Source of the DNA: Magallana gigas
Lineage: Eukaryota
Direction: 5' to 3'
Assembly: GCF_963853765.1 (NCBI RefSeq)
Contig: NC_088860.1
Coordinates: forward strand, 16,120,001-16,184,000
Length of the DNA stretch: 64,000 nucleotides
Shown: positions 9,401-40,238 of the stretch, piece by piece
How positions within the stretch are numbered: position 1 is the stretch's first letter
Layout: each line of letters opens with the position of its first letter
The notes under the pieces: generated by a model
What the model was told of the DNA's origin: nothing
What the model saw: only the letters and a program-made list of their open reading frames with translations
Database searches by the model: none
Translations under genes and position numbers: made by a program

Positions 9401-11181
9401 TCCAGGCATAATCGTTTTGGAAGTTTTTGTCGCATCGAATAAATCATTGAATCTTGCTTACTGTATCTTTTGAGAAAGCTCAAACTTGAAGAAATTTAGG
9501 ATCCGCTTACTTGTTAAAGCAGTCGTGTACAGCAATATCGAACCAATCCATGATGTGTTGAAATGGTCCTCATTAAAGATTTTACTGAACACAATATGGA
9601 ACACTCCAATGCTATAAGTTATTCCACAAATAATAAACTGCGTGAAGAAGGCAGCGATGGCAACCACCCATCTATTTCCTCCACTGTCCCTCGGCAACAT
9701 CACGTCAGGAACACTGATCGCAATCATCTAGGGACTGAAAAAGAAATACACCACATAGAACGTAACTTCAATCATTCAGTTTTCCATCATAAAAAAGCCT
9801 GTTTTGTGAAAAACTGCAACTGGAAAACTAATTCTACGGTAATTTCTCTCCCCCCCCCCCTCTCTCTCTCTTTCCCCATAAAGAAGTGGACATGCTTAGC
9901 CTTCATGCAACTACATCCCTGAAGAGAATACCATGTTGTATATATATGTTAGTAGATGCTTAAGAATCACTCAGATATAGCATGTTACCGGTAATAGAAA
10001 AAAATTCACAAACATTACACATCTGTTATTTTGACTCCATAATTAAATACCATTAATACCAGTGTACATGTATCTACCGCACTGTGCCTTAGAAGCATTT
10101 ATAATTCCCATGCCTACTGTCCTCAATTTTAACATTAAACAGGCTTCTAAAGTGGTGTTGGGATACATACATTGATTAATACAACACTGCATGGTGAAAT
10201 AATTTTATCTGCATGTCCTCAACAGAGATTTCATCAAGGCCAACGCCGATACAGTCAAAAACAAAAGATCCGATGAATGTCAGAGTTAGTTATGGCCAGT
10301 CGTTCTGTCTTTGGGAAGAGTAAGTGAAGCATGCAAAATGGCCGTCATATCGGGGTTTGATTTGGCTACTGCTCCTTACAAATTACAGGAGTCAGTTTTT
10401 TTAATTACTACCGATACATGTTTTGGCTATTTTGTAATCTTTAAATTTAATGTGTACCAAAAGCTTGGTCATTCTAAAGAAGACAGATCAGCAAGTTATG
10501 GGTTTTAAATGTGACCCAAATTTCTGTATACTGTTTTGTACCTGCATTAAAATTTAATAATGCAGTATTTTGACACCAGCTATTAACATAAAAAGCCAAG
10601 AGGTTTGCTGCAAGCAAAAAATATTATAAACTCATTCTTTTACATGAATATTCATATGCACATGTATCATGTGTATTTATTACTTTGCAATCAAATCATT
10701 GCATTATGCTTAAGGGAGCCTAAATAATTATTCCACCTTGAAATGGCTACATAAAGCTAAGCTCAGATATTAATTATTACTTTCTCAAACTTTGGCAGCT
10801 GGGTATATACCAGGTAATCAAATATATTACACTCTTTCAGTAGAAACGTTAGTGTATCTACAAGCTACATTGAATTCACAGACCATTTCAGAAAACACAA
10901 AATACAAAATCTTAATCTTCATGATTTTGTCACCAAATATATTAACATGCAGGTACTGTTGGTTCACGCTATATTAAAACAAAAACTCAAAAATACATAA
11001 AGATCAAATGCATGATCTCAATACTTAAACAAAAAGGCCAATGAACATTTTCACCTTTAAGACCTTTTTATGTGCTAGTACAAGGGTCAGTCCACCCTTC
11101 AATGGGCACAATTCAACCAGGTCAGTTTCACTGAATTCATTCGTAACATACCTGAATATACACTCTTTTCATTGCCGCCAT
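454..11181 (-). CDS. SLC16A: Monocarboxylate transporter (SLC16/MCT family, MFS), about 436-446 aa
   Basis: Phase-consistent GT-AG exons: 11181-11152 (MAAMKRVYIQ, tentative), 9727-9511, 9160-9017, 6619-5885, 1344-1294 (GLLIQEETEFKYAFYLAG), 617-454 (TAA at 456-454). MCT-like motifs: DSGGNRWVVAIAAFFTQFIICG, FGCRWSVILGG, QHFYKQR, GSIMAGPAAG. Multiple hydrophobic helices. Confidence 0.9.
1991..2055 (-). mobile_element. tRNA-derived (SINE-like) head in an MCT intron
   Basis: Minus strand has A-box-like TAGCGCCATGGGTTAGA and B-box-like GTTCAAAACC; no intact cloverleaf. Confidence 0.45.
5551..5620. repeat. 35-bp tandem duplication
   Basis: ACCTCTGACTGCCCTTGTGAAG(G/A)TAACAATTAA occurs twice. Confidence 0.9.
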
Positions 11182-12848: not shown

Positions 12849-15800
12849 CTAAAAGCGATTTTCGAAGAAGGACTCGAGAGATCCCCTTGGTTGGGCCACA
12901 GGAGGGTATCTTCTCTTTCTTTTACCAGTACCTCTGGGTGACATCCTTGATCTCTCAATGTAATCTTTCTTTTCCTACAATCAATGTCAGTGTGTCTATT
13001 ATGGTTTTAATATAGAATTAAGGACTCGAATATAAAAAGAATTTTTATTAGCATAAACTGGGTTAGTCTGTCTACTCTATAAAAATTAAAAAAGTGGTTC
13101 ATAATATATAATTATAAACTGCTGTAACCAAGTTACTCGAGTTCTAATGAACTCCAATAATAATACTCCTTATCATCTAAACAGTTGAACAGAGTAATCA
13201 ACTTTGATATTTTGCAGAAAAAAATGTTTTAAAATTACATTTCATTTACCCGGTAGATCAAAATAATGGGAATACATGTACCTGGTAAAGTTTGTCTTTC
13301 TCCTGCATTTTCCATCGCCTTCTGGTGGCCTAAAAAAAGGTAAATATTAGGATGCACACCTTTCAGTATGTATTTAGATTATCTATTGGAATGAAGAAGT
13401 CAAGATGTGGAAAATGAAAACTTTAAATTCTTTAAAAATCAAAATCAAGACTCTGGTACATTATCTACAAAATAAGTTCTTAGAAAAAAGGTTAACAGAA
13501 CCAATTCAACATTTCTATCAAAGATTGAATAGAAAATCTTATCAATTTACATTTACAATTTATACATCTATAGTACCTCACTACATCAAGGCTTATTATA
13601 CTAAAACACCATGTCAAAAGATGGCAATTTAAATGTTTTATTTGTTAATTTGTTTTTTATCAATCAATTTGGTTGAATATCATCATACATGTAGCACAGT
13701 GGTTAGAGTGTCGGGCTTGTGAACTGCAGATCAGTTCAAATCTGCCTGGGGCTTTTGTTTATAAATACATGTACTGAAATGAATTTTTGAAAATCATACT
13801 TTTTCATCCAAAAGCACATCAATATATACTTTTTACGTATCATGGTATCTACCATAGTCACATGATTTTCTGCTGATTTTAGAAAGTATTTCAAGGTGTA
13901 GTGAACCACTTTAATTTCAAGAACTAAAATCAACACTGATTTATGACTGAACTCACAGTGAACAATTAAATACGATTACTAATTTATATTAACAATATCC
14001 AAGACAAATATCCTATGCAATACATGTATAAAGGGTGTGCAAAGTGAAATGTGTTTGCTGTCAATTAACATATCATTTGTAATAATGTATTACATTTACA
14101 GCAGGAAATAATTCTTACAGTGAAAGCTATGTAAATCCCAAAGATGACATGAAAAAATATGAAGATAGCAGCAAGACTGACAATGGCATTGCGATCATAA
14201 ATCTTCACTTCTTTCATTTGGTATACGTAAGCTAAGGATTTCATTGCAGCATTTTGAGTAGCATTCAATGCAAGAAATATCAGTGCAGCCAGTACATACA
14301 GATCCTGTGAAAGAATAACGGAGCAAATAAAAAATTAATATTAAAGAACAAACATACATGTACCAGTATATGAAGCTGGTATAAATGTGTTTTACCAGTA
14401 TTTCATTTATTCATTTAGTTGCATGAATTTGTCAATTTCTGGAGTTTACTGATGAACACTGATTATGGGATTTGTTTCATTCAATTACCAGGTAAGTGAG
14501 GTATGAAATAGTTGGCAGACTTTGCTTGACGACCAGTTTAAAGGCGACAGCAGTAAGGAAAAGGGTGACATTGCACATCAGTCTGTCTGGAGAATTAACT
14601 TCAATGGAGTAGGAGGCAAAGGTCAGGCCAATGATCAGGAACTGTAACAGAGGTGCATGAGTACTAATCTACAAGGTGTTATTCTGAGAAAACATAAAAT
14701 ACAAAAGTATTTCAATGTATATACATACAATTTCTTTCAATTGAACATCAATTCCATTCATTAAGAACCAATCCAACATAGATCATTGCAATTCATAATG
14801 TTTGAAATTCTGTTCATGTCTCTCAGTTTGTAATAATTAATTGACATATTGTGTGCATATTACATGTAGCACTTTTGGTGTTTAGTGGGAATATATTTTC
14901 CAACCTTTAATTAAGGTTAGATTTGAATCTACACATTTCTTAATTTAATTTTAATTCAATTTTAAAGTTAATTTATGTGCATTGACATTTAGTCACTTGG
15001 AGAAATTGCTCACTGCCAAAATTGTTGAAAAGAATTTAAAATATATAGAGAAATGTAAAATTTTACTTCATATTATACTGAAAAATTATAATAATTACAA
15101 ACCACAATGAATATAATATTCCACACAAAATAGCCTATCTTCCTTGCCACCCTGCACTGTATATGAAGGATAGGATGGACAGTTGACCTAGCGTACTCCA
15201 CAGTTGTTTTGTCTCTGTAGGACTCAGTGTGGTTGTACAGGTTCCACTCCGAGGCATCCAGGAAGGCCTGAGTGTTGACTGAACTGAGAGAACTCTGGTC
15301 TTCAATTATCTCAATCTCATGAATCGACCTTTCTGTAGAGATGGAAATTGTCAGGTCCTGAAGTTGAAACAAACTCCATAAAGCAAAGAGTAGGGAAGTC
15401 AATGTCAGTCAAATTAGAAACAAATTAATTTTAAGGCATATTATTGAATGTATTCGATGTGCTTCCTAAAGACTTTTGTTGCAGAATTGAAAATATGATT
15501 TCTTTTATCTATGTAGATGAAATATCTATCAAACTGACAATTAATGGGCACAATATCTTTTTTGTTAATATACCTGGTACCTGCCTGATACATAAAAGTC
15601 ATTTATTCCTCTGGAGATGAAGAATACAATAATATCAAGAGCTTAAATTTACCTGAACATCCACTGGAAAGTGTTGCAATTCCAAATTCTCCTTAAAGAA
15701 GGCTTTGAATCTCCACATCAGCTGCACTCTTGGTGGATTATCATCATTGCTATGTAGAATAGAGTAGTCTATGTGTTCCTCTTCTATTGATCCGTCAATA

Positions 15801-17765
15801 TTCAAAATAATCAACTTTGGAGTCCACATCATTGATGGTTCAAAAACCTTAACGTTAGATTTTATAATACATATTATCTTTTAAAAAAATGATGCTATTT
15901 AATGCAGTAAAATATATTGTGTCTGAAGAACTAACTAAGAGGATGTATTTTAGCAAAGTATTTTTAAGGGAAGGGAGAATGTGGTTTTTCAGGGAACATT
16001 TATAGCTGTAAGCCAACTTTTATTCACAAAAGTAATACTTTATATCGCTTTTTACCAAAGATTATAAACAATGACTAATTTTTGCAATCAAGATGTAGGA
16101 GGAGTTATCCGTACAATGAGGGTACCTTATACGCAATATTTTGCCAAAAAATTACTAAGTGCAAAAGCTGGCAAAATGCACACCTCTGATATATGTACGA
16201 TTGATCTGCAAAAGAACAACTTCCTATCTTGAAAACTGTAGGAGGAGTTATTCGTACAATGAGGGTACCCTTTTGGCAGCCGCACGCCCCGCATTTCAAT
16301 AGTTTGATTTTTCCGTTGGAAAACCCGATTAAAAATAAAAGCTGCACAAAGTCACGTGCACTCGATTGGCTCTCGACTTTGATAAATATAGCAAATATTG
16401 TCTTGTTTAAAATCATTGTAGGTGGGAATTTCCTAAAATTTATAAATATCATGGTTATGTATGCATAGTATGGAAATTACATGTACATCATTCATAATAT
16501 CATATATGAGTAGCTAGCATATAAAGGTCTTCAAGGTATATGAAAATTATGATATTGCATGTATTAAGTGTGTGTAGAATATGTGGAATGAAAAATCATG
16601 GAGGTAATTACATGTGTAATAGGATAGAAGGAATAATAATATATTGAAAACATATGGCTGGACCAGGAATCGAACCCGGAATTCCTGTACCTCTAGTCAG
16701 GAGCTCTAGCACTGAGCTACCCTGGTAGATATCCATGGTCCATATAGCCCAAAGTACTTTATTCCTCCCTACTTAAATGGTCTTCATCCTTGAAGATCAC
16801 CCCAGGTTCTTCTCCTGGAAGAATTTAACCTGTTAGTTCCAGGGGCAGGTCCCAGAACCAAATGTAATAGGTAGGGAGGAATATTTAAAACATATGGCTG
16901 GACTGGGAATCAAACCCAAGACCCCTGTACCTCTAGTCAGGAGCTCTACCACTGAGCTACACAGGCCGATATCCACAGTCCATATAGCCCCAACTACTAC
17001 ACATGTATAATTTACACAGTACTCAACACTGATAAATGTGCGACAAATATCAGTAGCTTATATATTAGATTTGATAGAGTATCATAACAAAAATCACATG
17101 CATATCATAAAGTTTAACAAAAATCTTAGCATCGGTAGTTTGACTTTCGATTAATTAACAACAAATCATCAAGTATCATACGTGTAGCTGGCAAAAAGGA
17201 TCTAAGGTAGAAACTTTACAGTTGTCACAGTAGCACAATATGTATTTTATTGTACATGTATGTTGTATGCAAAGGAAAACTTGCAAAAATTTATTAACCT
17301 TTTCATCTGGCTTGATCAAGTGATCATGCCACTTTGCTTGGATGAAAATCTCTGACAGAAACTTCTGGTCCACTGTATCAATATCGTTTATTTTCAAAAA
17401 AGTGAGCTTTATTTCTACTGTCACCTAAAAAACCAAACAAAGTTAACAATATACACAGATAAACTGACAGACATGGTGATTCCAATATACATTTAACATC
17501 CAAAAATTTATTTTTTGGGACTACATGTATTATGATAAAAAATGAGCACCTTATCTTCTCTCAGAGCACTGAGATCTTTTGACAGAATTGATCGAAGAGG
17601 TGCTAATCCTTGATGATTGCTCTCTGATTCAAGTGTTAATTCCAAAAGTCGATTAAGGAGTTCATTGTTTTTCTCAATGTTGCTGGATAAAGCTTTGAAA
17701 ACCTTGGCTAACTTGACATTTTCATCTACTGTTTTCTTGGAGTCCACTGTCTCCACCTCCAACAT
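12849..17765 (-). CDS. Cys-less pentameric ligand-gated ion channel subunit, copy A (434 aa)
   Basis: Eight phase-0 exons: 17765-17550, 17424-17299, 15847-15653, 15357-15103, 14641-14489, 14304-14119, 13329-13282, 12974-12849 (TAG). pLGIC motifs: DTVDQKF..EIFIQAKWHD, WTPKL, LELQHFPVDVQDL (Pro-loop without Cys), RVARKIGYF, M2 DRLMCNVTLFLTAVAFK, SLPTISYLTYLD, and M3/M4 helices. Confidence 0.88.
13691..13755 (+). mobile_element. tRNA-derived (SINE-like) head in a channel A intron
   Basis: TAGCACAGTGGTTAGAG (A box) and GTTCAAATCT (B box); degenerate stems. Confidence 0.45.
16095..16275. repeat. Dispersed repeat fragment with a 143-bp internal duplication
   Basis: GTAGGAGGAGTTAT(C/T)CGTACAATGAGGGTACC at 16095 and 16238; probably an internal core repeat of a non-autonomous element. 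Confidence 0.45.
16615..17001. mobile_element. About 390-bp bipartite element carrying two tRNA-like units
   Basis: Direct repeats 240 bp apart, each tRNA-like on the minus strand; TGTA...TACA termini; CATG on both flanks; internal perfect 13-bp inverted repeat (16760-16772 / 16871-16883). Confidence 0.65.
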
Positions 17766-17968
17766 AATCTTTTCAAGGAGAGTGTATCAACCGTTTCTAC
17801 AAGGAACAGTAGATCTATATCATAAATCAAATTACATACAACTCTAAAATTATAGTGACTGAAGAAAATCTTATCATACATTTTTATTGATGGTTTGTTA
17901 GCTTTCCTTAGTTCAAGTATTTTTATTTACAATTTTGACGTAAACTGCAGTTTTATTTCAAGCACACA

Positions 17969-17988
17969 TGGGGGGGGGGGGGGGGGGG

Positions 17989-18037
<49 letters not shown>
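17969..18037. repeat. poly-G plus (GA)n microsatellite
   Basis: Read directly; follows TTTATTTCAAGCACACA, the same position as the (GA)n in copy B. Confidence 0.95.
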
Positions 18038-18039
<2 letters not shown>

Positions 18040-20371
18040 ATTTGTGTACAAAATAAAGGGAGGGAATACTTTAAATATATTATCAGTTTCAGCATGGTAA
18101 ATATTGTAAATACTGAAGATTCCTCATGGTGTTTTTTGCATATTGAAATGAAACTGAATGCTGTATGTATATATAGAAAAGTTTTAATTTTTTTTTTAAG
18201 AAGTAAAATAAGGAATCTACAGTATAAAAGAAATACAACTACAGTATACTTCTAAAGATATACATAAGTGGAATGGTAGTTCAACTTGCATTATATCATC
18301 TAAGGGCAGGAGGACAACATACTTACGACCAGATTAAATTCAAGGCCCAAAGATCAAATCACTAGATGTCCAATGATTGAATCACTATATATGGCAACAA
18401 ACATTTGACAGCAACTGTTTTGATGAAATGATAAAATATAAAAGTTTTTATGTTTGATAAATATGTAACTAAAAAGCTGTGACTGCAACAATATTTGATC
18501 CTCAGTCAGAAAAAACTCATAGTAATGTTATCATATCAAAGATGTTATCACTTTTTCATAATTTATAATTTTAAAACAATTGAATTGAAATGACACTTTA
18601 TCAGACACTTAGCCCATTGCAAAGGCCTAAAAAAAATTGTGTGTTTAGGGTAACACTGATGAAAAAATTAGGTTAGGAAGGTAGGTATTTTTTTAATTTT
18701 ATCATATTTTTTTCTGCATGAATTCTAAGAATGTTTGTTTGTCATATTCAAAAACAGATTTTTTAATAGAAATAACATTAAATTCACAATCATATAAAAA
18801 CAGACATCTAAAAATGGTAGGATCGGGGAATTTTTGTAGGTTAGGTTGTGTTACCCTAAACACACAACTTTTTTTTTTTTAGGCCAAATTATGACGAATA
18901 TAATATGACAAACGAGTATTTTGTGTGGATGTCAGAGTTCATATTACACTGTTGATTCAGATTTCCTGTACATGGTCTAAACATAATATACATATATGTA
19001 CATGTATATCAGAAATTGAATGCATTAAAATCATAAAAATTTCTTATAATTTCACTGGGGTTTTTTTATATAGTCAAACCAGATTTTATAGTGTCAGTTC
19101 ACAGAAGTTTTAACAGTCTTTAAAAGTGGAGCTGAAATAAAAAGAATGATATAAGGCAATAAGTTCCACTAAATTATAACACCATTAAATTATCATTAGT
19201 TTTCATAAAGTTCTTTCATTGCAAACAACTGAGACTTCAAAGGCACATAAGTGCCCCCCCCCCCCTTTCTTAGTTATTACTAATATAAGTAAAATAAGGA
19301 TAAATCTATAATACGTAATAAAAGTGTATCATTATTATATGATTACATCAATCAAATATTTTGATGTCAGCCAAATAGAAAGGGGATCACATCTCGAAGA
19401 AATTATCCCCACGGCGTCCATCCATATAAAAAAAAATAGCAGAAAAGGGGGAGGGCAGATATAACACGCTATCCTTACTTCCTTACAAAAAGAACGACAT
19501 CATTAGCTGCAAAATTAAATTCAGATACAAAAATGAAACCAACTTAAGTAAAGGAAAAAAATCAAAAGCTTTTAAATCCCAAACCTTTACTGCAAAACGT
19601 GAAAATCTTCAAACATCGTCTGCAACAATTCCGGAAGTTGCAGTAGTTGTGTAGGATCAAAAACCGATGCTATCAAAGTTCCGAATTCATTTCGCCGAAT
19701 GGTCCAAGTAATAGTTTACAACACACGTGCTTCATTTGGTATAAATCTATTTATATGTATAAAACATGATATACATAAATATTACTATCTCAGTTGCGTC
19801 GAAGGTGGGGGGGGGGGGGGAGGCTACACTTAAAATCAGAAATCTTGACAAGCTAAAAAAAAAAAGGGGTATTACGGTTATGTTATTGTCAGACTCATCC
19901 AAAACAATTCTTAACAAGCAAAACAAACAAAACAAACAAACAAAAAAAATCATGTAATTACTAATCCGTGGGGGAAGGGGTAGCGAAATATATACCTATA
20001 TAGCTTATACCTAAAACTGCAATTTTCAATATCACTCCTGACAGCATTTTTACAAAGTCAATGTATCTCTTTTTAAGATGCGTAAAAATGACTACATGCA
20101 ATTAGTTCATACATAGAACTGAGTTTAATATGAATAATAACAATTACTTATGTTTTAAAATTAATCATCTCTGACCATCCTACATCGTGTTACACGAGTA
20201 AATCATCCTTGATTTTTCATTTGCCAGGTGTGGTTAAGATCTCATCATCATTAATATGCATGTACCTATCCCCAGTCACTACTGGTCGTACGTGATGCTG
20301 ATCGTGCCTGTGCTACGGTCGTGACTCCCTTGGTTGATCCTAGCATTCAAAATCGCGTTAAGTGCTTGAGA

Positions 20372-22425
20372 GGTGTGTTCCCGTTTTGCACACATTTGAT
20401 AATTATAGAACAAAAGGTTTGATTTGTGTTGTGATTGCAATTATAGTCTGCTTTCGGTCAAAGATTTTACCTGGATTTTTACCTTTTTTTTATCAGTGCC
20501 TTAACGATAAAACAAGAAGAATACAGATATTTTGTTGTGTTTTAGGTCTAATAACTATTTGTTTTTTTCGTTTGATAAAATAAAGATAATGATATAATTA
20601 AAAAGTCTGATAAAAAAAATAATGATTAGATTAGATGAATTGACTTTTACATTTTTGTCCATTTACCTTAAATATAAAACCAAATGAATTAGGAAAAATT
20701 GCCGGTCCAAAGCCAATTGGAAGCTGATTCAATGGATCATTATATGATAAAGGGGAAAACTACATAGACAGTCATATGGATTACTCCGTGTCTCTTTTTA
20801 CAATTGAGTTGCAAATTATGTAAAACGCATGTTTATAATTGATTGTTTGGTATCAACAGAAAAAATATTATGAAAGAAAACAGATCTTTATCACAAAATA
20901 TTTCAATGTTTGAACCAGCGACCTTGACAGTAGTTCGTATGGCATCACCGCTTTAATATATGGCGGGTCACTTTCTAGTTTTTCAAATCAGAGGTTAAAT
21001 ACATAAAAAATCTGACAAAAATAATATTTTAATATTGATGCGATATACCTCAAACTGAAAAAGGTTGAAAATGCATGAATTAGGTCTACATTTGATAGGT
21101 TTTGTGAATTAATCTTTAGAGTTTTTGAAGCATGCATATAACATTTCCTATTTATCATCATACAGTTTGTCTTTTTTCTTTGATTATTCAAGATATACCA
21201 CAACATAAATGAAAAATATTTAGCAGCGTTTTCACTAGACACATTTCTTCCATTTATGTCAGCAAAAGCAATAATTAAATAGTAACATATGATATTTCTC
21301 TTCGAAATTTTAGCATCTACATGTACTTCCTTTATAGGCAGTAAGTTAAACAAAGACGCTACATACTCAACATTTTTGCAATAAACTTTCTTGTTTAAAA
21401 AAAAATAATGAAATTGTTCATGACCAAATTGATGTTTGAAATCAAATTCAAGAATATGGATGTCAATTATTATGTAAATGTGCTTTTATGCAAGTTATAT
21501 TGTAACATAAAATACATGTAAATTTCAATTGCGAGAAGATATGTTTTTATTTATTTTATTGTCAATTGCCCTCGCAGGAATAGTGATATACATTTTGTAG
21601 ACTATAGCAATTAAGCAATTATCTCACCTGGTCAAATTCCCGTTTCGCACACATTTTTTCGATACCTAATTTTCAAATGTGTGCAAAACGGGAACAAACC
21701 AGTGGCGTAGCTAGACCAGAAAAGAAGTGCATGCTTAAAATGGCAGGGGGTATGGGGCCGCCATGAGACTCCCAGTGGGTCCAGGGCGAAGCCTGATGGG
21801 GGCCCAGGGAGCGAAGGCCCCGGAAGCTCATGGATTCTGACGATTTTTAACACTAAAAAATCATCGCAGAAATTGAAGGAATGCTCACTATTTAAGCATA
21901 TTTTTAGGCAGTTAAAATTGTTTTTGGTTTAGTTTAGGCTTAAAATAAAATCACAAAACTTCATTAAAAGCTAAAAGAAGAAAAAAACTTTTGACGTTTG
22001 TTTTTGACCCACTCAAAGCTTTTATTCTTAAGTTCATTTTCACCTAGTTTATGGTAATGAATATTTCAATAAAACTGTGATATTCTATGGGGGAAATTTA
22101 AAATGATGTGTAAAACTAAGTTCAAATGCAAAATAAATCTTTGCTTTATTAGGTACATGCATTGTGTACTGTTTCTTTAATATGGTACTCTAAGACCACA
22201 TTGCGTGTCTATATTTGGTACTTAAGACGTCCTTGTTTAGCATTGATAAATTTGTCGATGCCCCGTTGACGGGTTGTTGGAATAACTAACTATGGACCTT
22301 AATACTTGAATTCTTTTTGTAAATTCTTTTTTCTTTATTTTTTTACTGAGTTTCTTCCTTTTTTTCCAAAATGATTTGCATGCTCAGGCATATAAGCATA
22401 CATGGTAGCTACGCCACTGCAAACC
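20372..22425. mobile_element. Non-autonomous DNA transposon with about 28-bp TIRs and 8-bp TSD (GG...CC termini; Merlin- or MULE-like)
   Basis: GCTTGAGA at 20364-20371 and 22426-22433. Left TIR is GGTGTGTTCCCGTTTTGCACACATTTGA; its perfect 23-bp complement is at 21673-21695. The right TIR is interrupted by a nested MITE. Confidence 0.8.
21700..22419. mobile_element. MITE with 15-bp TIRs and 5-bp TSD, nested in the right TIR of the previous element
   Basis: CAGTGGCGTAGCTAG ... GTAGCTACGCCACTG (14/15 match); CAAAC at 21695-21699 and 22420-22424. Confidence 0.85.
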
Positions 22426-23559
22426 GCTTGAGATTGCAAGGTAAGACACACGGGCGTTTGACGTGCCAGTCGAAGGTGTCATGTTTGGAGCCGGGTTGCC
22501 ACTTGCAACTTGCGATGCTTATAGCTAGAACCGTGCTTGCGTCTAACGATTATCGAGCAACGACGTACGTTTACCTTTTGAACGGTGGTAATAACGCGTC
22601 GTAGGTCACCTGCAAGTCAATCGTTTCGACGTCTTTATGTGCCTCACGACAGTTGCTCAGACAGTTTTTAGTTTTTACATTAAAGATTTTTTTTTCTTTA
22701 AACCTGCACTGAAATGAATTTACCGTATAGGCAAGTGAATATTGAAAAATACATCAAAATAACTCGAAGAAAAGGAAAACTATAAGCTGTAGTTGCTGCT
22801 TTGATGATTAAACTAGCTAAGACTAGATTTAGACACGAATAAACAATGTTTTCAAAACATAATTTATAATTCGTATCTGATACCATAAAGGACTGAATAT
22901 TGCTCCGAAATCTAGAAGAAAGTCTGCGCAAAAAATATACTAATTTTAGCGAAGTAATTATCAAAAAATAATATTCCTGGCCACTATTATATCTCGTTGT
23001 GACGTTTTTGTTAACTTTTTGTTATCTTCAGAAAAGTTCTTACGAAACTCATTTATAATTCAATCATTTTAAAAAGCAAAGCCTACAAAATTCTTCCCTG
23101 TTATTCTGATTTTGATATTATGAATTTTGGGGTAAAAAGATGAGTTTCTGGACAAAATATCGCTGAAAACTGAAAAATTTCTAAACGTTTATTCTTAGGA
23201 CAACAATTTTAAAACATGAGATCAAATTTCTGCGGTTTCATAACATAAGAGACAGGATATAAAAAAAAAACTTCTTCAAAAACGGAAATTTGTGGGTTAA
23301 AAAGACTATATTTTTGACGAATTTGGGAAAAAAAATGAAAATGAATTATTATTGATAAAGTATAAAACTATTAAGTATAAACAAGTCGACTTTTTAAAAC
23401 TTTTTAGACAGCATACTTCATCACGATATGATGATAATCTTTACCTTTGACTAAACATCCCAATTTTGGGTTAATTAAACTCTTTTTACAGAAAAATTTA
23501 GAAAAACTGAATTTATGACTGCCGTCTTTTTAATTTGAACTATTAATTAATCAGTTTTT

Positions 23560-24090
23560 CTCAAAAACATGTATAACAATTTAGGTTTTGGATATATATG
23601 GAACTGTAAAGAACAATTTAATGAACATGTATTCTTACATGAAGTGAAGCAGAGGTTGACCGACATGTCTATACAAGAAGGACATGGCTACTTTGAAAAT
23701 TCTCCCAAATGTATAATGTATAAGCACTTATGTAATAATTTTGAAGTACAATAATATTCAACAAAACCAATACCAACTGTATATGTTCAATTTATAAGTA
23801 AATACCGTTTATCCTCTCATCAACTCGAGATTGAGCGTGGCAGATTTTATAATATCCATAGAAATGAGAGAGTTTGTAAACTATGTTCACTATCACAGAT
23901 TGAAGGTGAGTTTCATTTTATTTTAATCTGTCCATTTTATAAGGAAATAAGAAAGTTGTATGTAAAAAAATATTATTATGAAAAGCCTTCTGTTTTTAAA
24001 CTTATTCAATTACTTTCAACAAAGAATATCAAAGAGTTGTGCAATTTGGGAAAATACCTATATAAATACTCAAAATTACAATAAAATTAT
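23560..24090 (+). mobile_element. 5'-truncated LINE (CR1/L2-type ORF2 C-terminus), degenerate
   Basis: Translates as LGFGYIWN...KYRLSSHQLEIERGRF...ERVCKLC...IEGEFHFILICPFY..IRK, the typical non-LTR ORF2 C-terminal Cys/His motif; internal stop at 23752-23754. Confidence 0.85.
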
Positions 24091-24299
24091 AATTACTTTT
24101 TGTTTTGATAATATACTCTTCATTATCCTGTTTACTTCTGTCATGTATATTTTGCAGACTGTGCACACGCAGTCTAATACAAGATTGTGATGGTCTTTCT
24201 TTTTTGTTTTTAAAAATGCTTTCATATGTATATATGTTAAACCTATGAATCGTATGGTTCTTGGTAATAAACAATACAATATAGTAATATACATATGTA

Positions 24300-24846
24300 C
24301 ATATGAGAGCTAGTAAAAAAAAAAGATTTTCTAGGAGCCCCTGTCCCAGGGGGTCCTGATTTTACAATTTTGGTAGAAGGCTTCACGGACATGATAGTTT
24401 TCGAATACATAATTATATGAGAAGTTTTCGAATACATATATGAGAATAGTAGAAAATTTTCTAAGGTGTAATAAATTTTTACTACATGCTGATATTGGCT
24501 TGACCATAAGGTCTGAATCCCTGACCAGGGACAATGAACTCACAATTTTGGTAGATGGCTTCATGGACACCATAACCATTTATTATTTTTTTCCCAAAGT
24601 GTGTGGGAGTAGAGGAGACGATGTTGCAAAATGCGGCTATTTGCATATTTGGCCCGTCTATGAGCACATGGGGGTGTTAAGTCAAGAATCGTACAATTTA
24701 GATTCCTCTTACCGTAGAGATTTTTCACATTGGTTAAAAATGGTTTGTAGTTTTCGAGAAGATTCTGCAGTTAAAATGTAAAATTGTTGATGCGCACGGC
24801 GATGAAGGAAGATCAGTTGCAATAGGTCACATTAATGACTCAGGCT
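24300..24846 (+). mobile_element. Helitron/Pearl-type non-autonomous element with two degenerate Cg170-like satellite monomers
   Basis: Two about 170-bp-spaced ACAATTTTGGTAGA.GGCTTCA.GGACA units; 3' end GCAATAGGTCACATTAATGACTCAGG resembles the CvA/Cg170 element tail (recognised from memory). Confidence 0.65.
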
Positions 24847-24982
24847 TAACATACATTGATTTTGTATCCTGTAATGATAAAGTGTATCATGATAAATAAA
24901 CCAGCACATTCAAAAATAGGAGTTAATTAAGTGTTTTTAAAAGCAGAGTTATTGCCCTTTTTGCAGAGCACCAGCAGCTCGG

Positions 24983-27900
24983 CTAGTAGCGACTTTCGAA
25001 GAAGGACTCGAGAGATCCCCTTGGTTGGGCCACAGGAGGGTATCTTCTCTTTCGTTTACCAGTACCTCTGGGTGACATCCTTGATCTCTCAATGTAATCT
25101 TTCTTTTCCTACAATCAATGTCAGTGAGTCTAAGCTAGTTTAAAAAAATGTTTACAAGAATGTTTCAAATAAAGCAGAATTGAATTGAGTATATTAAACT
25201 GGGTTGAGCAGTTTACTCTACAAAAATTCTTATAATACACAAGCTATTGTAACCAAGTTCATATGATTATATTTAATTCAAACAGGAGTAATCAAATTGA
25301 TTTATTTTTAAAGATTACAATTATTTTAGATCAAAATATTGAGAGTACATTTACCTGGTAAAGTTTGTCTTTTTCCTGCATTTTCCATCGCCTTCTGGTG
25401 GCCTCAAAAAGATAAATGCTACCCTCCGTATTTTTAGATTACATATACTATAACAACTCAAGAAGACAAAATTTGCAAAAAATGTCTCGGTCATCACAAT
25501 TATTACAATTGATTTCAAGAATTCAAACTGTTAAATAATAAAAAATGATTACTCAATTATATGATTACTGTAAACCAATTGTACTATTATTCTCAACTAC
25601 TTAATTTCGCAATTTACCCGAGATGAACTTGATCGCGGCTGTAATACATGTAACATTATGTTTTTTTAGATTACCCCCGTTTCGTCACATATATTGGTCA
25701 TACCGTGTTTTATGTGAACCCCGTTTTTTGTAAGACAGTACTTCCAATAGCCTGGTTCCGGCCTACCCATTATGGGTAGGCCGGAACCAGGCTATACTCC
25801 CGAGTGTTTCATTAAAGGCACACGTTTTTTTTTCTTTTATTACAATTACATGTTTAGTAAATACTGGTTTGCGGTAAGAAATATTTGCGACAATGAGGCT
25901 CTTGCGAACTTCCCGACAATTTCTCGCAAGCAATTCAAATGGTTTACAGTATCATTGATGTCCAAGGTTAATAACCTAAGCAATGGAATTTTAAAGGGGC
26001 ATGGTCACGATTTTGGTCAAAAATTATTTTTCCGATTTGAATAATTACACTGCTTCAGTGAGGCATTCTTATTATTAGGCAAACAAAATTGAGTGTCATT
26101 TGTTGAGTTATGTGCGAATTACAGAGCTTACAATTCTTTGACATGTAAACAAAGCTTTTGTTTAAATTTTGAATGTTGAAGTGAAAATTTTAAATTTAGA
26201 CTTAAGATGAATGTGTTAAACATGTTAAACGTTAGGATCTGTTTATCTATGCTTAAAATGAAGAAGAAGATAAAAAATCAGCTTGAAAAAGGTTTTTAAT
26301 TGGTATATTCGATTGAACCTATGTAAACAAAAACAGGGCACGGGCCTTGTTTACACGACACAGATTTGTGAGCTCTGTATTTTGCCTAAAACTTAAAGAC
26401 TGACTCTCAAATTTCATTTGATCATTAGAAATGCATTTCTTAAGCATTGTTAATAATAAAAATAGAATTTGACGAAAATCGTGATCATGCCCTTAAAAGT
26501 GAATCGTGTCTGTTGTCGATCAATAATTCTTACAGTGAAGGCTATATAAATTCCAAAGACGATATGAAACAATATGAAGATAACAGCAAGGCTGGCAATG
26601 GAATTGCGATCATAAATCTTTACTTCCTTCAATTGATAAATGTAAGCTAAGGATTTCATTGCAGCATTCTGAGTAGCATTTAATGCAAGGAATATCAGTG
26701 CAGCCAGTACATACAGATCCTGTGAAAGATATTGAAAAGCATATAATTTATATACTGGTATAAAGTTCTATAATTTCATACTTTCATTTAGCTACATGAA
26801 CAATATCGGGAGCTTGTGAGCACTGATTATGGGATTTGTTTCATTCAATTACCAGGTAAGTGAGGTATGAAATAGTTGGCAGACTTTGCTTGACGACCAG
26901 TTTGAAGGTGACAGCAGTAAGGAAAAGGGTGATGTTGACAGCCAGTCTGTCTCCATTATCAACTTCAATGGAGTAGGAGGCAAAGGTCAGGCCAATGATC
27001 AGGAACTGAAACAGAGGTGCATTACTACTAATCTACTAGGTGTTATACCGAGATTTCTATGAAAACATAAAATACCGAAGACTAAAGTATATTTATGTAT
27101 ATCCATACATTCCGTTTCATTGAACATCACTCACATTCAAAAAGAAGCAAAGCCAAAAAATTGTTGGAGAAGCCCTTTGGGCTTCACACGATTTGATCAC
27201 ATGACCAACCAAGTTCATATCTAATTGAACTTTTCAACTTGCTGTTTATCTCTTAATTATGCTGAAAAATTATAATTATTACAAACCACAATGAATATGA
27301 TATTCCACACAAAATAGCCTATCTTCCTTGCCACCCTGCACTGTATATGAAGGATAGAATGGACAGTTGACCTAGCGTACTCGACAGTTGTTTTGTCTCT
27401 GTAGGACTCAGTGTGGTTGTACAGGTTCCACTCTGAGGCATCCAGGAAGGCCTGAGTGTTGACTGAACTGAGAGAACTCTGGTCTTCAATTATCTCAATC
27501 TCATGAATCGACTTTTCTGTACAGATGGAAATTGTCAGGTCCTGAAGTTGAAACAAAGAGTATGTAAGTTAATGCCAGTTAAATTACCGACAAATTAATA
27601 ATAAATATAATGAATGGTGGAAGGATTTTTTTTTTACCAGCAAGGCATTATTTAATGTATTCAGTGTGCTTCCTCAAGACTTGATCTTCACTGAATTGAA
27701 AATATCATTTCTATATCTATATTGAAGTAGTACTTGCCTGTTACACTTTAAGTCATTTATTGCTCTGGAGAAGTAGTACAATGACATCAAGAGCTTGATT
27801 TTACCTGAACATCCACTGGAAAGTGTTGCAATTCCAAATTCTCCTTAAAGAAAGCTTTGAATTTCCACATCAGCTGCACTCTTGGTGGATTGTCATCATT

Positions 27901-29051
27901 GCTATGTAGAATAGAGTAGTCTATGTGTTCCTCTTCTATTGATCCGTCAATATTCAAAATAATCAACTTTGGAGTCCACATCATTGATGGTTCAAATACC
28001 TTGATGTTTGATTCAAATACACATTTTCATTTTTAAAATGATGCTATTAAATGCCTTAAAATATATCGTGTCTGAATAGCTAAGAGGATGTACCTATTGC
28101 AAATTATTTTTAGGGGATTGAGGGGGCCATGTGATTGGTGGAATGTGGTTCTAAATATTATCTGTACAGCATGATATGTATTCTATTGTACATGTATGTT
28201 GTATGAATTCAAATGGACAGTCTATCAACTTTAAAATGTATTTACCTTTTCATCTGGCTTGATCAAGTGATCATGCCACTTTGCTTGGATGAAAATCTCT
28301 GACTGAAACTTCTGGTCCACTGTATCAATATCATTTATTTTCATAAAAGTGAGCTTTATTTCTACTGTCACCTAAAAAACCAAAACAAACTTGACAATAC
28401 ATTATATCATATGCATAAAACTGGATGGACAGACAGAATAAGGATAAACAGATCGTGCTCTGATGATTATCTCCCTTCATAAATTCATGAGTTTCAACAT
28501 ATGCATTCAGTGTATATATTATGTATAATCTCTGTGAGACCCCAGTCATTACAAGATCTTGATATGCAAGTTATCATGTAGGCCTATAAAAAAATAAAAT
28601 AGATTTAAAATAAAATCAACAAGAGGAAACATGGTAAATTGAGAGTGTAAAAGTTTTAAGAAAAAAGTTGATTCTCTTTTCTGATTTCAGAAAAAAGTAT
28701 AAAGTACAGACCTCAATACAATTCATGTATACAGACAGATAGAGACACCGACAATATTATTATGGTGATTCAAATATTTATTTTGCCTCCATAACTTTAT
28801 TATTTGGGAATTTTACGATAAAAAATGATTTATACCTTATCTTCTCTTGCAGCACTGAGATCTTTTGACAGAATTGATCGAAGAGGTGCTAATCCTTGAT
28901 GATTGCTCTCAGATTCAAGCGTTAATTCAAAAAGTTGATCAAGGAGTTCATTGTTTTTCTCAATGTTGCTGGATAAAACTTTGAAAACCTTGGCTAACTT
29001 GACATTTTCATCTTTTGTTTTCTTGGAGTTCACTGTCTCCACCTCCAACAT
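24983..29051 (-). CDS. Cys-less pentameric ligand-gated ion channel subunit, copy B (434 aa), tandem paralogue
   Basis: Exons 29051-28836, 28371-28246, 27999-27805, 27541-27287, 27005-26853, 26719-26534, 25402-25355, 25108-24983 (TAG). Exon lengths are identical to copy A; about 30 aa differences by manual count. M2 is DRLAVNITLFLTAVTFK. Confidence 0.88.
25747..25795. repeat. Perfect 49-bp palindrome (24-bp arms, 1-nt loop)
   Basis: ATAGCCTGGTTCCGGCCTACCCAT-T-ATGGGTAGGCCGGAACCAGGCTAT. Confidence 0.9.
25991..26496. mobile_element. Kolobok-like MITE (TTAA target site) in intron 6 of copy B
   Basis: TTAA-AGGGGCATGGTCACGATTTTGGTCAAA ... TTTGACGAAAATCGTGATCATGCCC-TTAA; absent from the paralogous intron of copy A. 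Confidence 0.75.

Positions 29052-40168: not shown

Positions 40169-40238
<70 letters not shown>

What the first reader, a model, noticed from the sequence alone, without database searches (positions are those of the whole stretch)
14489..27005. Paralogue divergence is concentrated at the ion-selectivity filter and pore
Seen: ligand-domain exons 3-4 differ at about 4 of 150 residues, while the M1-M2 linker/M2 differs at 7 of 18 (A: NSPDRLMCNVTLFLTAVA; B: DNGDRLAVNITLFLTAVT). With R as 0', A has P-2' D-1' M2' A13' and B has G-2' D-1' A2' T13'. Known: -2', -1', 2' and 13' set charge selectivity and conductance (G-E-K/R in cation channels, P-A-R in anion channels). Inference: B has a cation-type filter, A an unusual hybrid P-D-R filter, so the same stimulus might give different ionic outputs.
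Basis: partly seen in the sequence, partly recalled or inferred. Interest (0 to 1): 0.72.

Follow-up and report, generated by a model that had tools for sequence, protein, structure and literature searches.

The report
Oyster channel twins differing at the pore
Two neighbouring, expressed copies of an uncharacterised oyster ion-channel gene are almost identical except for a short stretch lining the narrow inner end of the pore, a stretch that does not vary in other oysters, so the copies probably pass ions differently.

Summary

**The genes.** Genes A (17765-12849) and B (29051-24983) lie in tandem on the minus strand. Each has 8 coding exons and encodes 434 aa. Both are spliced and expressed. 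They belong to the Cys-less pentameric ligand-gated channels of molluscs.

**The divergence.**
- All 7 residue differences in exon 5 fall within 18 residues (-4' to 13').
- Twelve mismatches lie within 30 nt. The silent sites around them are nearly identical.
- In Ostrea, Saccostrea and C. virginica this segment varies only at -2' (S/A).
- The excess of A/B differences here, relative to outgroup variability, gives Fisher P=2e-5.
- Both copies are derived. A gained D-4'N, P-2', A2'M, V3'C and I5'V. B gained S-3'N, G-2' and A13'T.

**Background.** Synonymous divergence is low in exons 1-5 (about 0.06) against 0.32 in exon 6 and about 0.2-0.28 in introns. A second species label carries A-like derived bases at B's exon 2. 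Both points indicate gene conversion outside the pore patch.

**Interpretation: partly supported.**
- Both copies keep the family-wide D-1', so a switch of charge selectivity is unlikely. A difference in conductance or Ca2+ permeability is more likely.
- dN does not significantly exceed the neutral rate.
- Exons 1 and 6 also diverge.
- B carries a loop-C Pro-to-Ser change.
- Function is untested.

The parts
12849..18658 (-). Gene A, whole transcribed span (5'UTR exon 18658-18327, then 8 coding exons; 434 aa)
   Evidence: A 1909-nt spliced transcript contig from a public run (L022, encoding P0171) maps at 99-100% identity, exon by exon.
17550..17765 (-). A exon 1 (start codon; N-terminal helix; no signal peptide)
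17299..17424 (-). A exon 2 (beta1-beta2 of the ligand-binding domain)
   Evidence: weak per-exon PF02931 match
15653..15847 (-). A exon 3 (ends at the FPVDVQ Pro-loop motif)
15103..15357 (-). A exon 4 (rest of the ligand domain, loop C, M1 start)
14489..14641 (-). A exon 5 (M1 end, M1-M2 linker, M2, M2-M3 loop)
14543..14596 (-). A 18-residue pore segment, -4' to 13' (NSPDRLMCNVTLFLTAVA). The 30-nt core is 14567-14596.
14119..14304 (-). A exon 6 (M3, short M3-M4 loop, M4)
13282..13329 (-). A exon 7 (basic post-M4 tail, ATRRRWK...)
12849..12974 (-). A exon 8 coding part, including the stop codon
24983..29051 (-). Gene B, coding span (8 exons, 434 aa)
   Evidence: Same exon structure as A. Splice joints in two RNA-type runs fall at the predicted boundaries. 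The UniProt Magallana gigas entry P0182 is a mis-modelled version of it.
28836..29051 (-). B exon 1
28246..28371 (-). B exon 2
   Evidence: joint between exons 3 and 2
27805..27999 (-). B exon 3
27287..27541 (-). B exon 4 (includes the loop-C Pro-to-Ser codon at 27358)
26853..27005 (-). B exon 5 (M2 exon)
26907..26960 (-). B 18-residue pore segment (DNGDRLAVNITLFLTAVT). The 30-nt core is 26931-26960.
   Evidence: RNA-run contigs with 0-1 mismatches cover it.
26534..26719 (-). B exon 6
25355..25402 (-). B exon 7
24983..25108 (-). B exon 8 coding part

Best explanation
A and B arose by a lineage-specific tandem duplication. The parent gene looks single-copy across bivalves and encodes an orphan Cys-less pentameric ligand-gated channel subunit. 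The window's species is Magallana (Crassostrea) gigas or a sibling species.

Short-tract gene conversion and purifying selection keep the N-terminal and ligand-binding exons, and most of the M2 exon, almost identical between the copies. A 30-nt patch has escaped this homogenisation. It encodes the end of the M1-M2 linker and the cytoplasmic half of M2 (-4' to 5'), and 13' differs as well. Both copies fixed radical replacements there.

The most likely reading is that selection maintains a difference in pore properties. Both channels probably stay cation-selective because D-1' is kept. A has lost the -4' acidic ring, has a rigid Pro at -2' and a bulky Met at 2'. It is therefore predicted to have a narrower, lower-conductance and less Ca2+-permeable pore, or a different blocker profile, than B (G-2', A2', T13'). 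The nearly identical extracellular domains would also allow A/B heteromers with intermediate pores.

- **Shown:** the gene models, expression of both copies, the localisation and polarity of the substitutions, and the heterogeneity of silent divergence.
- **Inferred:** selection as the cause, and every functional consequence.
For: **Gene models and expression.**
- A is confirmed by a spliced transcript contig.
- B shows splice joints at the predicted boundaries, B-specific contigs over its pore patch, and no intron coverage, in two RNA-type runs from different studies.

**Family.**
- Pfam PF02931 and PF02932 match.
- The AF2 model has mean pLDDT 80.9 and matches GlyR, GABA-A and GLIC at E about 1e-19.

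**Duplication.** A and B are sisters (support 100/97) inside (Ostrea,(Saccostrea,(C. virginica,(A,B)))). The genome holds only two close copies.

**Localisation.**
- Exon 5 has dN/dS 1.54. The 18-residue segment has dN 0.36 and dS 0.13. The rest of exon 5 has dN 0.
- The sliding window shows one sharp pN peak at codons 271-300.

**Constraint elsewhere.**
- The segment is invariant in three other oyster genera except for S/A at -2', and nearly invariant across bivalves.
- Paralogue differences against outgroup-variable sites are 7:1 in the segment and 23:139 elsewhere, Fisher P=2e-5. Against exon 6 the test gives P=0.004.

**Both lineages derived.** Several codons carry multi-nucleotide changes: GCT to ATG, GTC to TGC, TCT to AAT.

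**Homogenised background.**
- dS is about 0.06 in exons 1-5, 0.32 in exon 6, and about 0.2-0.28 in introns (Fisher P=0.0006).
- 115 silent sites around the patch carry 6 mismatches, P=6e-6 under a neutral rate of 0.2.
- A genomic contig from a second species label is anchored in B's intron and carries A's derived bases at all three exon-2 diagnostic sites.

**Fixation.** No variant appears in B's exon 5 or 6 in four runs. B's exon 5 is identical in the second species label.

**No ectopic donor.** Nothing else in the genome matches A's patch within 3 mismatches.

**Recurrence.** SPDRLM also occurs in Dreissena and NGDR in Haliotis. P-2' always co-occurs with Met at 1' or 2'.

**Mutational precedent.** GlyR A-1'E (a P-E-R filter) is cation-selective with PCl/PNa 0.34. 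Removing P-2' as well strengthens this to 0.13 and adds Ca2+ permeability (PMC2233820).
Against: - **Not above neutral.** Against the unconverted neutral level (0.2-0.3), the patch's replacement divergence is not significantly higher once its post-hoc choice is allowed for. The core has pN 0.44, binomial P=0.009-0.12 before correction.
- **Weak contrast with the rest of the gene.** The N:S contrast between the segment and the rest of the gene is borderline (P=0.053).
- **Possible single events.** Clustered multi-nucleotide changes can come from single complex mutations, which inflate dN/dS.
- **No functional data.** No ligand, current or localisation is known for any member of this family.
- **Topology is uncertain.** The family lacks a signal peptide and has a basic post-M4 tail.
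- **Weaker TM match for A.** A's TM-domain Pfam score (21.2) is below the curated cut-off (28.1), while B scores 30.1. This also fits partial degeneration of A's pore.
- **Limits of the conversion evidence.** It rests on contigs, which drop rare variants. Only the exon-2 case is anchored in B-specific intron sequence.
Confidence: 0.6

Rival explanations
1. Relaxed constraint or partial loss of pore function in one copy. After duplication A became redundant. Its pore degenerated toward a poorly conducting or purely modulatory subunit, and B's changes are minor drift.
For: - A carries the more radical changes: loss of D-4', P-2', Met at 2', Cys at 3'.
- A's PF02932 score falls to 21.2 bits, against 30.1 for B and 26.1 for Saccostrea.
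- The patch's divergence is statistically compatible with the neutral rate.
Against: - A is intact, spliced and expressed. Its transcript-derived protein stands for a cluster of 32 member sequences.
- Relaxation would have to be confined to about 10 codons, while 6'-12' and 14'-23' in the same exon show no change at all.
- B also changed at three otherwise invariant positions.
- The same SPDRLM state occurs in what appears to be Dreissena's orthologue.
- The A and B terminal branches are symmetrical, 0.035 and 0.039.
Confidence: 0.2
2. Mutational artefact of evolution. One or two complex multi-nucleotide events, or short templated patches, were fixed by drift, with little functional consequence.
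For: Differences sit in two tight clusters: 5 mismatches in 8 nt and 7 in 12 nt. Each cluster is mostly attributable to one lineage. A's second cluster can also be written as two 1-nt indels plus three substitutions, which is my own inspection of the codons.
Against: - The positions hit are invariant across oysters, so they are not free to drift.
- Two independent clusters in two lineages within the same 30 nt is an unlikely coincidence.
- No donor template exists in the genome within 3 mismatches.
- The resulting states recur elsewhere in the family.
Confidence: 0.1
3. Charge-selectivity switch, the strong form of the reader's idea. A's P-D-R filter makes it anion-permeable or non-selective while B is cationic, so one ligand gives opposite ionic outputs.
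For: P-2' is characteristic of anion-selective channels. A also lost the -4' acidic residue.
Against: - D-1' is retained. In GlyR an acidic -1' with P-2' present already gives cation selectivity (PMC2233820).
- A's linker has the cation-type length. It is one residue shorter than its LPQNR paralogues and than GABA-A gamma2.
- The anion-associated T13' is in B, not A.
Confidence: 0.07
4. Assembly or annotation artefact, for example a chimeric or mis-assembled M2 exon.
For: None found.
Against: - A's patch is present in an independent transcript contig.
- B's patch is present in the UniProt M. gigas entry and in four independent runs, two of them RNA-type.
Confidence: 0.01

Closest known systems
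Cys-less ('Pro-loop') pentameric ligand-gated channels of Lophotrochozoa, surveyed by Jaiteh, Taly and Henin 2016 (PMC4795631)
   Same: - Pro-loop FPxD motif without the two cysteines.
- Short, prokaryote-like M3-M4 loop.
- Distribution in molluscs, cnidarians and rotifers.
- A and B are members of this clade.
   Different: That survey lists predicted sequences only. It reports no function and no paralogue comparison. The pore-localised divergence of a recent tandem pair is not described there, nor in the other papers I found.
Engineered selectivity-filter mutants of GlyR alpha1 (A-1'E, P-2' deletion, T13'V; Keramidas et al. 2002, PMC2233820) and the alpha7 nAChR triple mutant (the latter from memory)
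   Same: The same positions (-2', -1', 13') differ between A and B. A's P-D-R is a natural analogue of the engineered P-E-R filter. B's G-D-R is an analogue of the filter lacking the Pro.
   Different: - The changes here are natural and have not been measured.
- A's Pro is a substitution, not an insertion.
- Further changes at -4', 2', 3' and 5' accompany it.
Molluscan nAChR subunits that became anion-selective through M1-M2 changes while keeping ACh binding (Lymnaea, van Nierop et al. 2005; recalled from memory, not checked here)
   Same: Within one ligand family, paralogues diverge at the selectivity filter. The principle is the same input with a different ionic output.
   Different: Those subunits lost the -1' acidic residue and gained a PAR-like motif. 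A and B both keep D-1'. They are recent tandem copies with converted ligand domains, and their ligand is unknown.
Divergence islands in gene-converted tandem duplicates, such as primate red/green opsin tuning sites (general knowledge of the Innan/Teshima models)
   Same: Silent divergence is low across most of the pair, with a sharp peak of replacement differences at functionally critical sites.
   Different: Here the island is a channel pore segment. Conversion is inferred from dS heterogeneity and one anchored contig, not from population data.

Membership tests
Pentameric ligand-gated ion channel (Pro-loop) superfamily | Ligand-binding domain matches Pfam PF02931 above the curated cut-off | tested here: met
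   A (P0171) scores 40.9 bits against a cut-off of 26. The Saccostrea orthologue scores 45.2. The public model of B lacks exon 2 and scores 24.3.
Pentameric ligand-gated ion channel (Pro-loop) superfamily | Transmembrane region matches Pfam PF02932 above the curated cut-off | tested here: inconclusive
   B scores 30.1 bits against a cut-off of 28.1, which passes. A scores 21.2 and Saccostrea 26.1, both below it. The short M3-M4 loop and the divergent family lower the scores.
Pentameric ligand-gated ion channel (Pro-loop) superfamily | Fold: extracellular beta-sandwich followed by four TM helices | tested here: met
   The AF2 model has mean pLDDT 80.9, with ten strands followed by four long helices after the beta-sandwich (H247-270, H276-299, H308-336, H339-397). 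Foldseek matches GlyR, GABA-A and GLIC at E about 1e-19, with TM 0.7-0.83 by target length.
Pentameric ligand-gated ion channel (Pro-loop) superfamily | Conserved Pro-loop FPxD motif, 0' Arg, 9' Leu and the M2-M3 loop Pro | tested here: met
   FPVDVQ is at the exon 3/4 junction. The profile aligns ungapped to GABA-A gamma2 M2, placing R at 0' and L at 9'. F, P and D of the motif are invariant in 38 relatives.
Pentameric ligand-gated ion channel (Pro-loop) superfamily | Pentameric assembly and ligand-gated current | not testable with these tools
   The ligand is unknown.
Classical Cys-loop receptors | Two cysteines flanking the Pro loop | tested here: not met
   The residue after FPVDVQ is Asp, and there is no upstream partner Cys. 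A and B therefore belong to the Cys-less clade of PMC4795631.
Cation-type selectivity filter (G-E-K/R) | Acidic residue at -1' | tested here: met
   Asp in both A and B, and in 31 of 37 relatives.
Cation-type selectivity filter (G-E-K/R) | Small residue (Gly) at -2' and the short linker length | tested here: inconclusive
   B has Gly and A has Pro. Both have the short linker, one residue less than their LPQNR paralogues and than GABA-A gamma2.
Anion-type selectivity filter (P-A-R) | Neutral -1' (Ala) with an inserted Pro at -2' | tested here: not met
   A has P-2' by substitution and keeps D-1'. B has neither feature.
Concerted evolution by gene conversion | Silent divergence is heterogeneous along the pair, and donor-type derived bases appear at the other locus | tested here: met
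   dS is about 0.06 in exons 1-5, 0.32 in exon 6, and 0.2-0.28 in introns. An intron-anchored contig of a second species label carries A's derived bases at all three exon-2 sites of B. Tract boundaries and rates were not resolved.
Positive selection on the pore patch | Replacement rate significantly above the neutral rate, or a significant MK or branch-site test | tested here: inconclusive
   Local dN/dS is 1.5-2.7, but it is not significant against a neutral rate of 0.2-0.3 after allowing for post-hoc window choice. The contrast with outgroup conservation is strong, P=2e-5. No codon-model test or MK test was possible.

The most novel reading that the evidence does not exclude
Selection against gene conversion keeps a natural 'same ligand domain, different pore' pair. 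A and B, alone or as heteromers, turn one still unknown stimulus into distinct ionic signals. The recurrent filter states (S-P-D-R-L-M in A and Dreissena, N-G-D-R in B and Haliotis, against the ancestral S-A/S-D-R) would then define discrete, convergently evolved pore classes in an uncharacterised animal branch of the pLGIC superfamily, with -2' Pro functionally coupled to a Met at 1' or 2'.
Probability: 0.35. Interest if true: 0.65.

Novelty: new variant of a known kind. Interest (0 to 1): 0.5.

Why it matters
Animal Cys-less pLGICs are known only as predicted sequences. I found no report of a ligand, a current or a physiological role for any of them.

This pair is a minimal natural experiment. 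The two proteins are 93% identical, and the pore differences are a handful of residues at the positions that mutagenesis has tied to charge selectivity, conductance and Ca2+ permeability. Single-copy orthologues supply the ancestral state.

If the divergence is adaptive, three things follow:
- Pore properties in this family can be retuned quickly while the sensor domain is held constant.
- The P-2'/Met coupling becomes a testable structural rule.
- The pair is a clean example of a divergence island maintained inside a gene-converted duplicate.

Tried and rejected
- **Per-exon Pfam scans** gave only sub-threshold hits. Full-length proteins were needed.
- **Global MAFFT of the two loci** misaligned exon 2 because of large intron indels. 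I replaced it with blockwise alignments.
- **An ectopic donor for A's patch**: a whole-genome pattern search with up to 3 mismatches found only A itself. More distant paralogues have a longer LPQNR/KPESR linker and cannot be donors.
- **An alternative longer exon 3 start in A** (AG at about 15878) was rejected. B has no in-frame AG there, and the transcript uses 15847.
- **An exon 6 read-through to the stop**, as in the public B model, was rejected on the transcript and the joints.
I could therefore not separate A-type from B-type proteins of other Magallana species inside the 90% cluster, and could not date the duplication.
- **The first sequencing-run run** failed because the machine was busy and was repeated.
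- **A-like letters in RNA contigs over B exons 2-4** are probably cross-mapped A transcripts. I did not count them as evidence for conversion.
- **P0182's A-like residues at 160 and 186** are ancestral states. They are therefore ordinary polymorphism, not evidence for conversion.
- **The 'Cys-less' clade of the MolluscaGenes preprint** refers to loss of the YxCC motif in nAChR-like sequences and is probably a different group.
- **Complex prediction** was not used. It cannot model pentamers, and I make no binding claim.
- **The search of earlier findings by words** returned nothing.

Full report
**1. What is there**

Both quoted peptides are in the window on the minus strand, A at 14596-14543 and B at 26960-26907. 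They belong to two tandem genes with identical structure. All introns are phase 0 with GT-AG ends.

| Exon | A | B |
|---|---|---|
| E1 | 17765-17550 | 29051-28836 |
| E2 | 17424-17299 | 28371-28246 |
| E3 | 15847-15653 | 27999-27805 |
| E4 | 15357-15103 | 27541-27287 |
| E5 | 14641-14489 | 27005-26853 |
| E6 | 14304-14119 | 26719-26534 |
| E7 | 13329-13282 | 25402-25355 |
| E8 | 12974-12849 | 25108-24983 |

Each gene encodes 434 aa.

- **A is confirmed by a transcript.** A 1909-nt spliced contig from a public run maps exon by exon at 99-100% identity. It adds a 5'UTR exon at 18658-18327.
- **B is transcribed.**
  - Contigs from two RNA-type runs in different studies carry joints at exactly the E7/E6, E6/E5, E5/E4, E4/E3 and E3/E2 boundaries.
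  - They cover B's pore patch and exon 6 with 0-1 mismatches.
  - They leave the introns uncovered. The two DNA-type runs laid beside them do cover the introns.
- **Species.** The UniProt Magallana gigas entry P0182 is B, mis-modelled: it lacks exon 2 and reads through the exon 6 donor. The window therefore comes from M. gigas or a very close relative.

**2. Family**

- The full-length proteins match Pfam Neur_chan_LBD, and for B also Neur_chan_memb.
- An AlphaFold model of A has mean pLDDT 80.9. It shows a beta-sandwich plus four long helices and matches GlyR, GABA-A and GLIC structures at E about 1e-19.
- The Pro-loop motif FPVDVQ is present but both Cys-loop cysteines are absent, and the M3-M4 loop is about 15 residues long. 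A and B therefore belong to the Cys-less clade of invertebrate pLGICs described from sequence surveys (PMC4795631).
- Relatives occur across bivalves, gastropods, a chiton, rotifers and corals.
- I found no functional study of any animal member.
- A profile of exon 5 aligns without gaps to GABA-A gamma2 M2.

**3. The observation, tested**

Residue differences by exon:

| Exon | Differences |
|---|---|
| E1 | 7/72 |
| E2 | 2/42 |
| E3 | 1/65 |
| E4 | 3/85 |
| E5 | 7/51 |
| E6 | 8/62 |
| E7 | 0/16 |
| E8 | 2/41 |

- All seven E5 differences lie in the 18 residues from -4' to 13'.
- At the DNA level they form two clusters, 5 mismatches in 8 nt and 7 in 12 nt. The 45 nt before them are identical, and the roughly 120 nt after them, running into intron 5, differ at only two or three positions.
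- Shuffling the gene's own differences gives P=0.003 for the best 10-residue window, P=0.012 for 18 residues, and P<0.0002 for 12 mismatches in 30 nt.
- A sliding window shows one sharp pN peak (0.23) at codons 271-300. A lower hump over exon 6 comes with high pS.
- The counts and the clustering are therefore real. The phrase 'concentrated at the pore' needs the qualification that exons 1 and 6 are also moderately diverged.

**4. Polarity and constraint**

- **Tree.** A maximum-likelihood tree follows the species tree: (Ostrea,(Saccostrea,(C. virginica,(A,B)))). A+B has support 100/97, and the terminal branches are equal at 0.035 and 0.039.
- **Copy number.** The genome has only these two close copies. 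The next paralogue is 44-61% identical.
- **Outgroup conservation.** In Ostrea, Saccostrea and C. virginica the segment reads EVDS(S/A)DRLAVNITLFLTAVAFK. Only -2' varies. Pinctada and scallops differ by little more.
- **A is derived** at D-4'N, x-2'P, A2'M (GCT to ATG), V3'C (GTC to TGC) and I5'V.
- **B is derived** at S-3'N (TCT to AAT), x-2'G and A13'T.
- **Contrast with outgroups.** Paralogue differences against outgroup-variable sites are 7:1 in the segment and 23:139 in the rest of the protein (Fisher P=2e-5). Against exons 2-4 the ratio is 6:50 (P=2e-5), and against exon 6 it is 8:21 (P=0.004). The slowest-evolving part of the protein among species is the fastest-evolving part between the paralogues.

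**5. Gene conversion and the neutral yardstick**

- Synonymous divergence is 0.04-0.09 in exons 1-5 and 0.32 in exon 6. Aligned intron blocks give about 0.2-0.28. The contrast between exons 1-5 and exon 6 gives Fisher P=0.0006.
- The 115 silent sites flanking the patch carry 6 mismatches. These are the synonymous sites of exon 5 outside the segment plus about 40-50 nt of each flanking intron. Under a neutral rate of 0.2 this gives P=6e-6.
- A genomic contig from a run with a different species label is anchored in 63 nt of B-specific intron. It carries A's bases at all three exon-2 diagnostic sites. Two of these are A-derived replacements (L82, L95). This is direct evidence for A-to-B conversion in that lineage.
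- No variant appears in B's exons 5-6 in any of the four runs. B's exon 5 is identical in the second species label.
- The pattern is a divergence island inside a homogenised background.
- Against the unconverted neutral level the island's replacement divergence is at or modestly above neutral. For the 18 residues dN is 0.36. For the 10-codon core pN is 0.44. The binomial P is 0.009-0.12 before any correction for choosing the window.
- Two things argue for selection rather than drift. The sites are otherwise invariant. And the same exon shows no change at all at 6'-12' and 14'-23'.
- Clustered multi-nucleotide changes could also be single complex mutations. No donor template exists in the genome.

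**6. Function, inferred**

- Both copies keep Asp at -1', as do 31 of 37 relatives.
- Their linker has the cation-type length. It is one residue shorter than in their LPQNR/KPESR paralogues and in GABA-A gamma2.
- In GlyR alpha1, A-1'E alone gives a P-E-R filter and cation selectivity (PCl/PNa 0.34). Deleting P-2' as well strengthens this to 0.13 and adds Ca2+ permeability (PMC2233820).
- I therefore expect both A and B to be cation-selective.
- A has lost the -4' acidic residue and has P-2' and M2'. It should have the tighter pore, with lower conductance and lower Ca2+ permeability. B has G-2', A2' and T13'.
- The role of the -4' 'cytoplasmic ring' in conductance is recalled from the nAChR literature and was not checked here.
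- 'Same stimulus' is plausible because the extracellular domains differ at only six residues. However, B has Pro241Ser in loop C, at a site conserved in at least 90% of relatives.

**7. Recurrence**

- SPDRLM, A's state, is also found in Dreissena. NGDR, B's state, is found in two Haliotis species.
- Every sequence with P-2' has Met at 1' or 2': 5 of 5, against 4 of 33 for the rest (Fisher P=2.5e-4). This is not corrected for phylogeny, and there are about three independent origins.
- This suggests discrete alternative pore designs rather than decay.

**8. Verdict**

The best explanation is a selectively maintained divergence of pore properties in a lineage-specific, gene-converted tandem pair of orphan Cys-less pLGIC subunits (confidence about 0.6). 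The rivals are:
- local relaxation or degeneration of A's pore (0.2)
- complex mutation plus drift (0.1)
- a true charge-selectivity switch (0.07)
- an assembly or annotation artefact (about 0.01)

The scan had already noted the tandem pair and its missing signal peptide on this same stretch (s1-385444, s1-385493).

This is a new variant of a known kind and of moderate interest. It is a clean natural experiment, but the family has no known ligand and nothing has been measured.

Noticed in passing
window 17765-17550 and 13329-12849 (A); 29051-28836 and 25402-24983 (B): Neither copy, nor any relative inspected, has a signal peptide. The AF2 model gives a long N-terminal helix (residues 7-43). 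M4 continues as one helix into a strongly basic tail (TATRRRWKMQEKDK...). The membrane topology and cellular location of this family are open, which bears on which end of the pore the -1' ring faces.
   Followed up: partly
window 27358 (B exon 4, codon 241): B has Ser where A, all outgroup oysters and at least 90% of 38 relatives have Pro. By my reading of the strand pattern, the site is in loop C. It is a possible difference in ligand sensitivity between the copies.
   Followed up: partly
window 26453-29051 (B): The public UniProt Magallana gigas model of B (P0182, named GABA receptor subunit gamma-2) omits exon 2 and reads through the exon 6 donor into the intron. Its name and its C-terminus are therefore unreliable.
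   Followed up: yes
window 28183-28384 (B exon 2 and flanks): In a run with a different species label, the B locus carries A-type bases at all three exon-2 diagnostic sites and at two nearby intron sites. This is a likely A-to-B gene conversion tract.
   Followed up: partly
window 25887-26450 (B intron 6): Contig depth runs to the thousands in all four runs, with many loose ends. This is a high-copy repeat or transposon fragment.
   Followed up: no
window 15971-17232 (A intron 2): There are about 1.26 kb of extra sequence relative to B. It contains two similar ORF-like units (17057-16836 and 16772-16611), so it is probably an inserted repeat.
   Followed up: no
G000 C3:4.62-4.67 Mb (L006-L009, L016-L018); C2:57.5 Mb (L003/L013); C6:9.49 Mb (L005/L014): More distant Cys-less paralogues exist, including a cluster of four on contig 3. 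Their M1-M2 linkers are one residue longer (LPQNR, KPESR, KTESR) and have no acidic residue at -1'. They form a different filter class from A and B within the same genome.
   Followed up: partly
P0160 (Dreissena), P0162/P0169 (Haliotis), P0018/P0177/P0180 (Gigantopelta): Filter states recur convergently. SPDRLM appears in Dreissena and NGDR in Haliotis. P-2' is always accompanied by Met at 1' or 2'.
   Followed up: partly
window about 5871-9727, minus strand: Long open frames look like a multi-pass transporter of the major-facilitator or monocarboxylate-transporter type, downstream of gene A. This was judged by eye only.
   Followed up: no
window about 38000-40300: A long low-complexity tandem repeat is open in several frames (TVTTKT / DSDNKD units) and has extreme AT skew (-0.65). 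It overlaps the stretch another first-stage note calls an unusual extracellular protein.
   Followed up: no
window 56984-57133: A run of 150 N (assembly gap or masked). It was left untouched.
   Followed up: no
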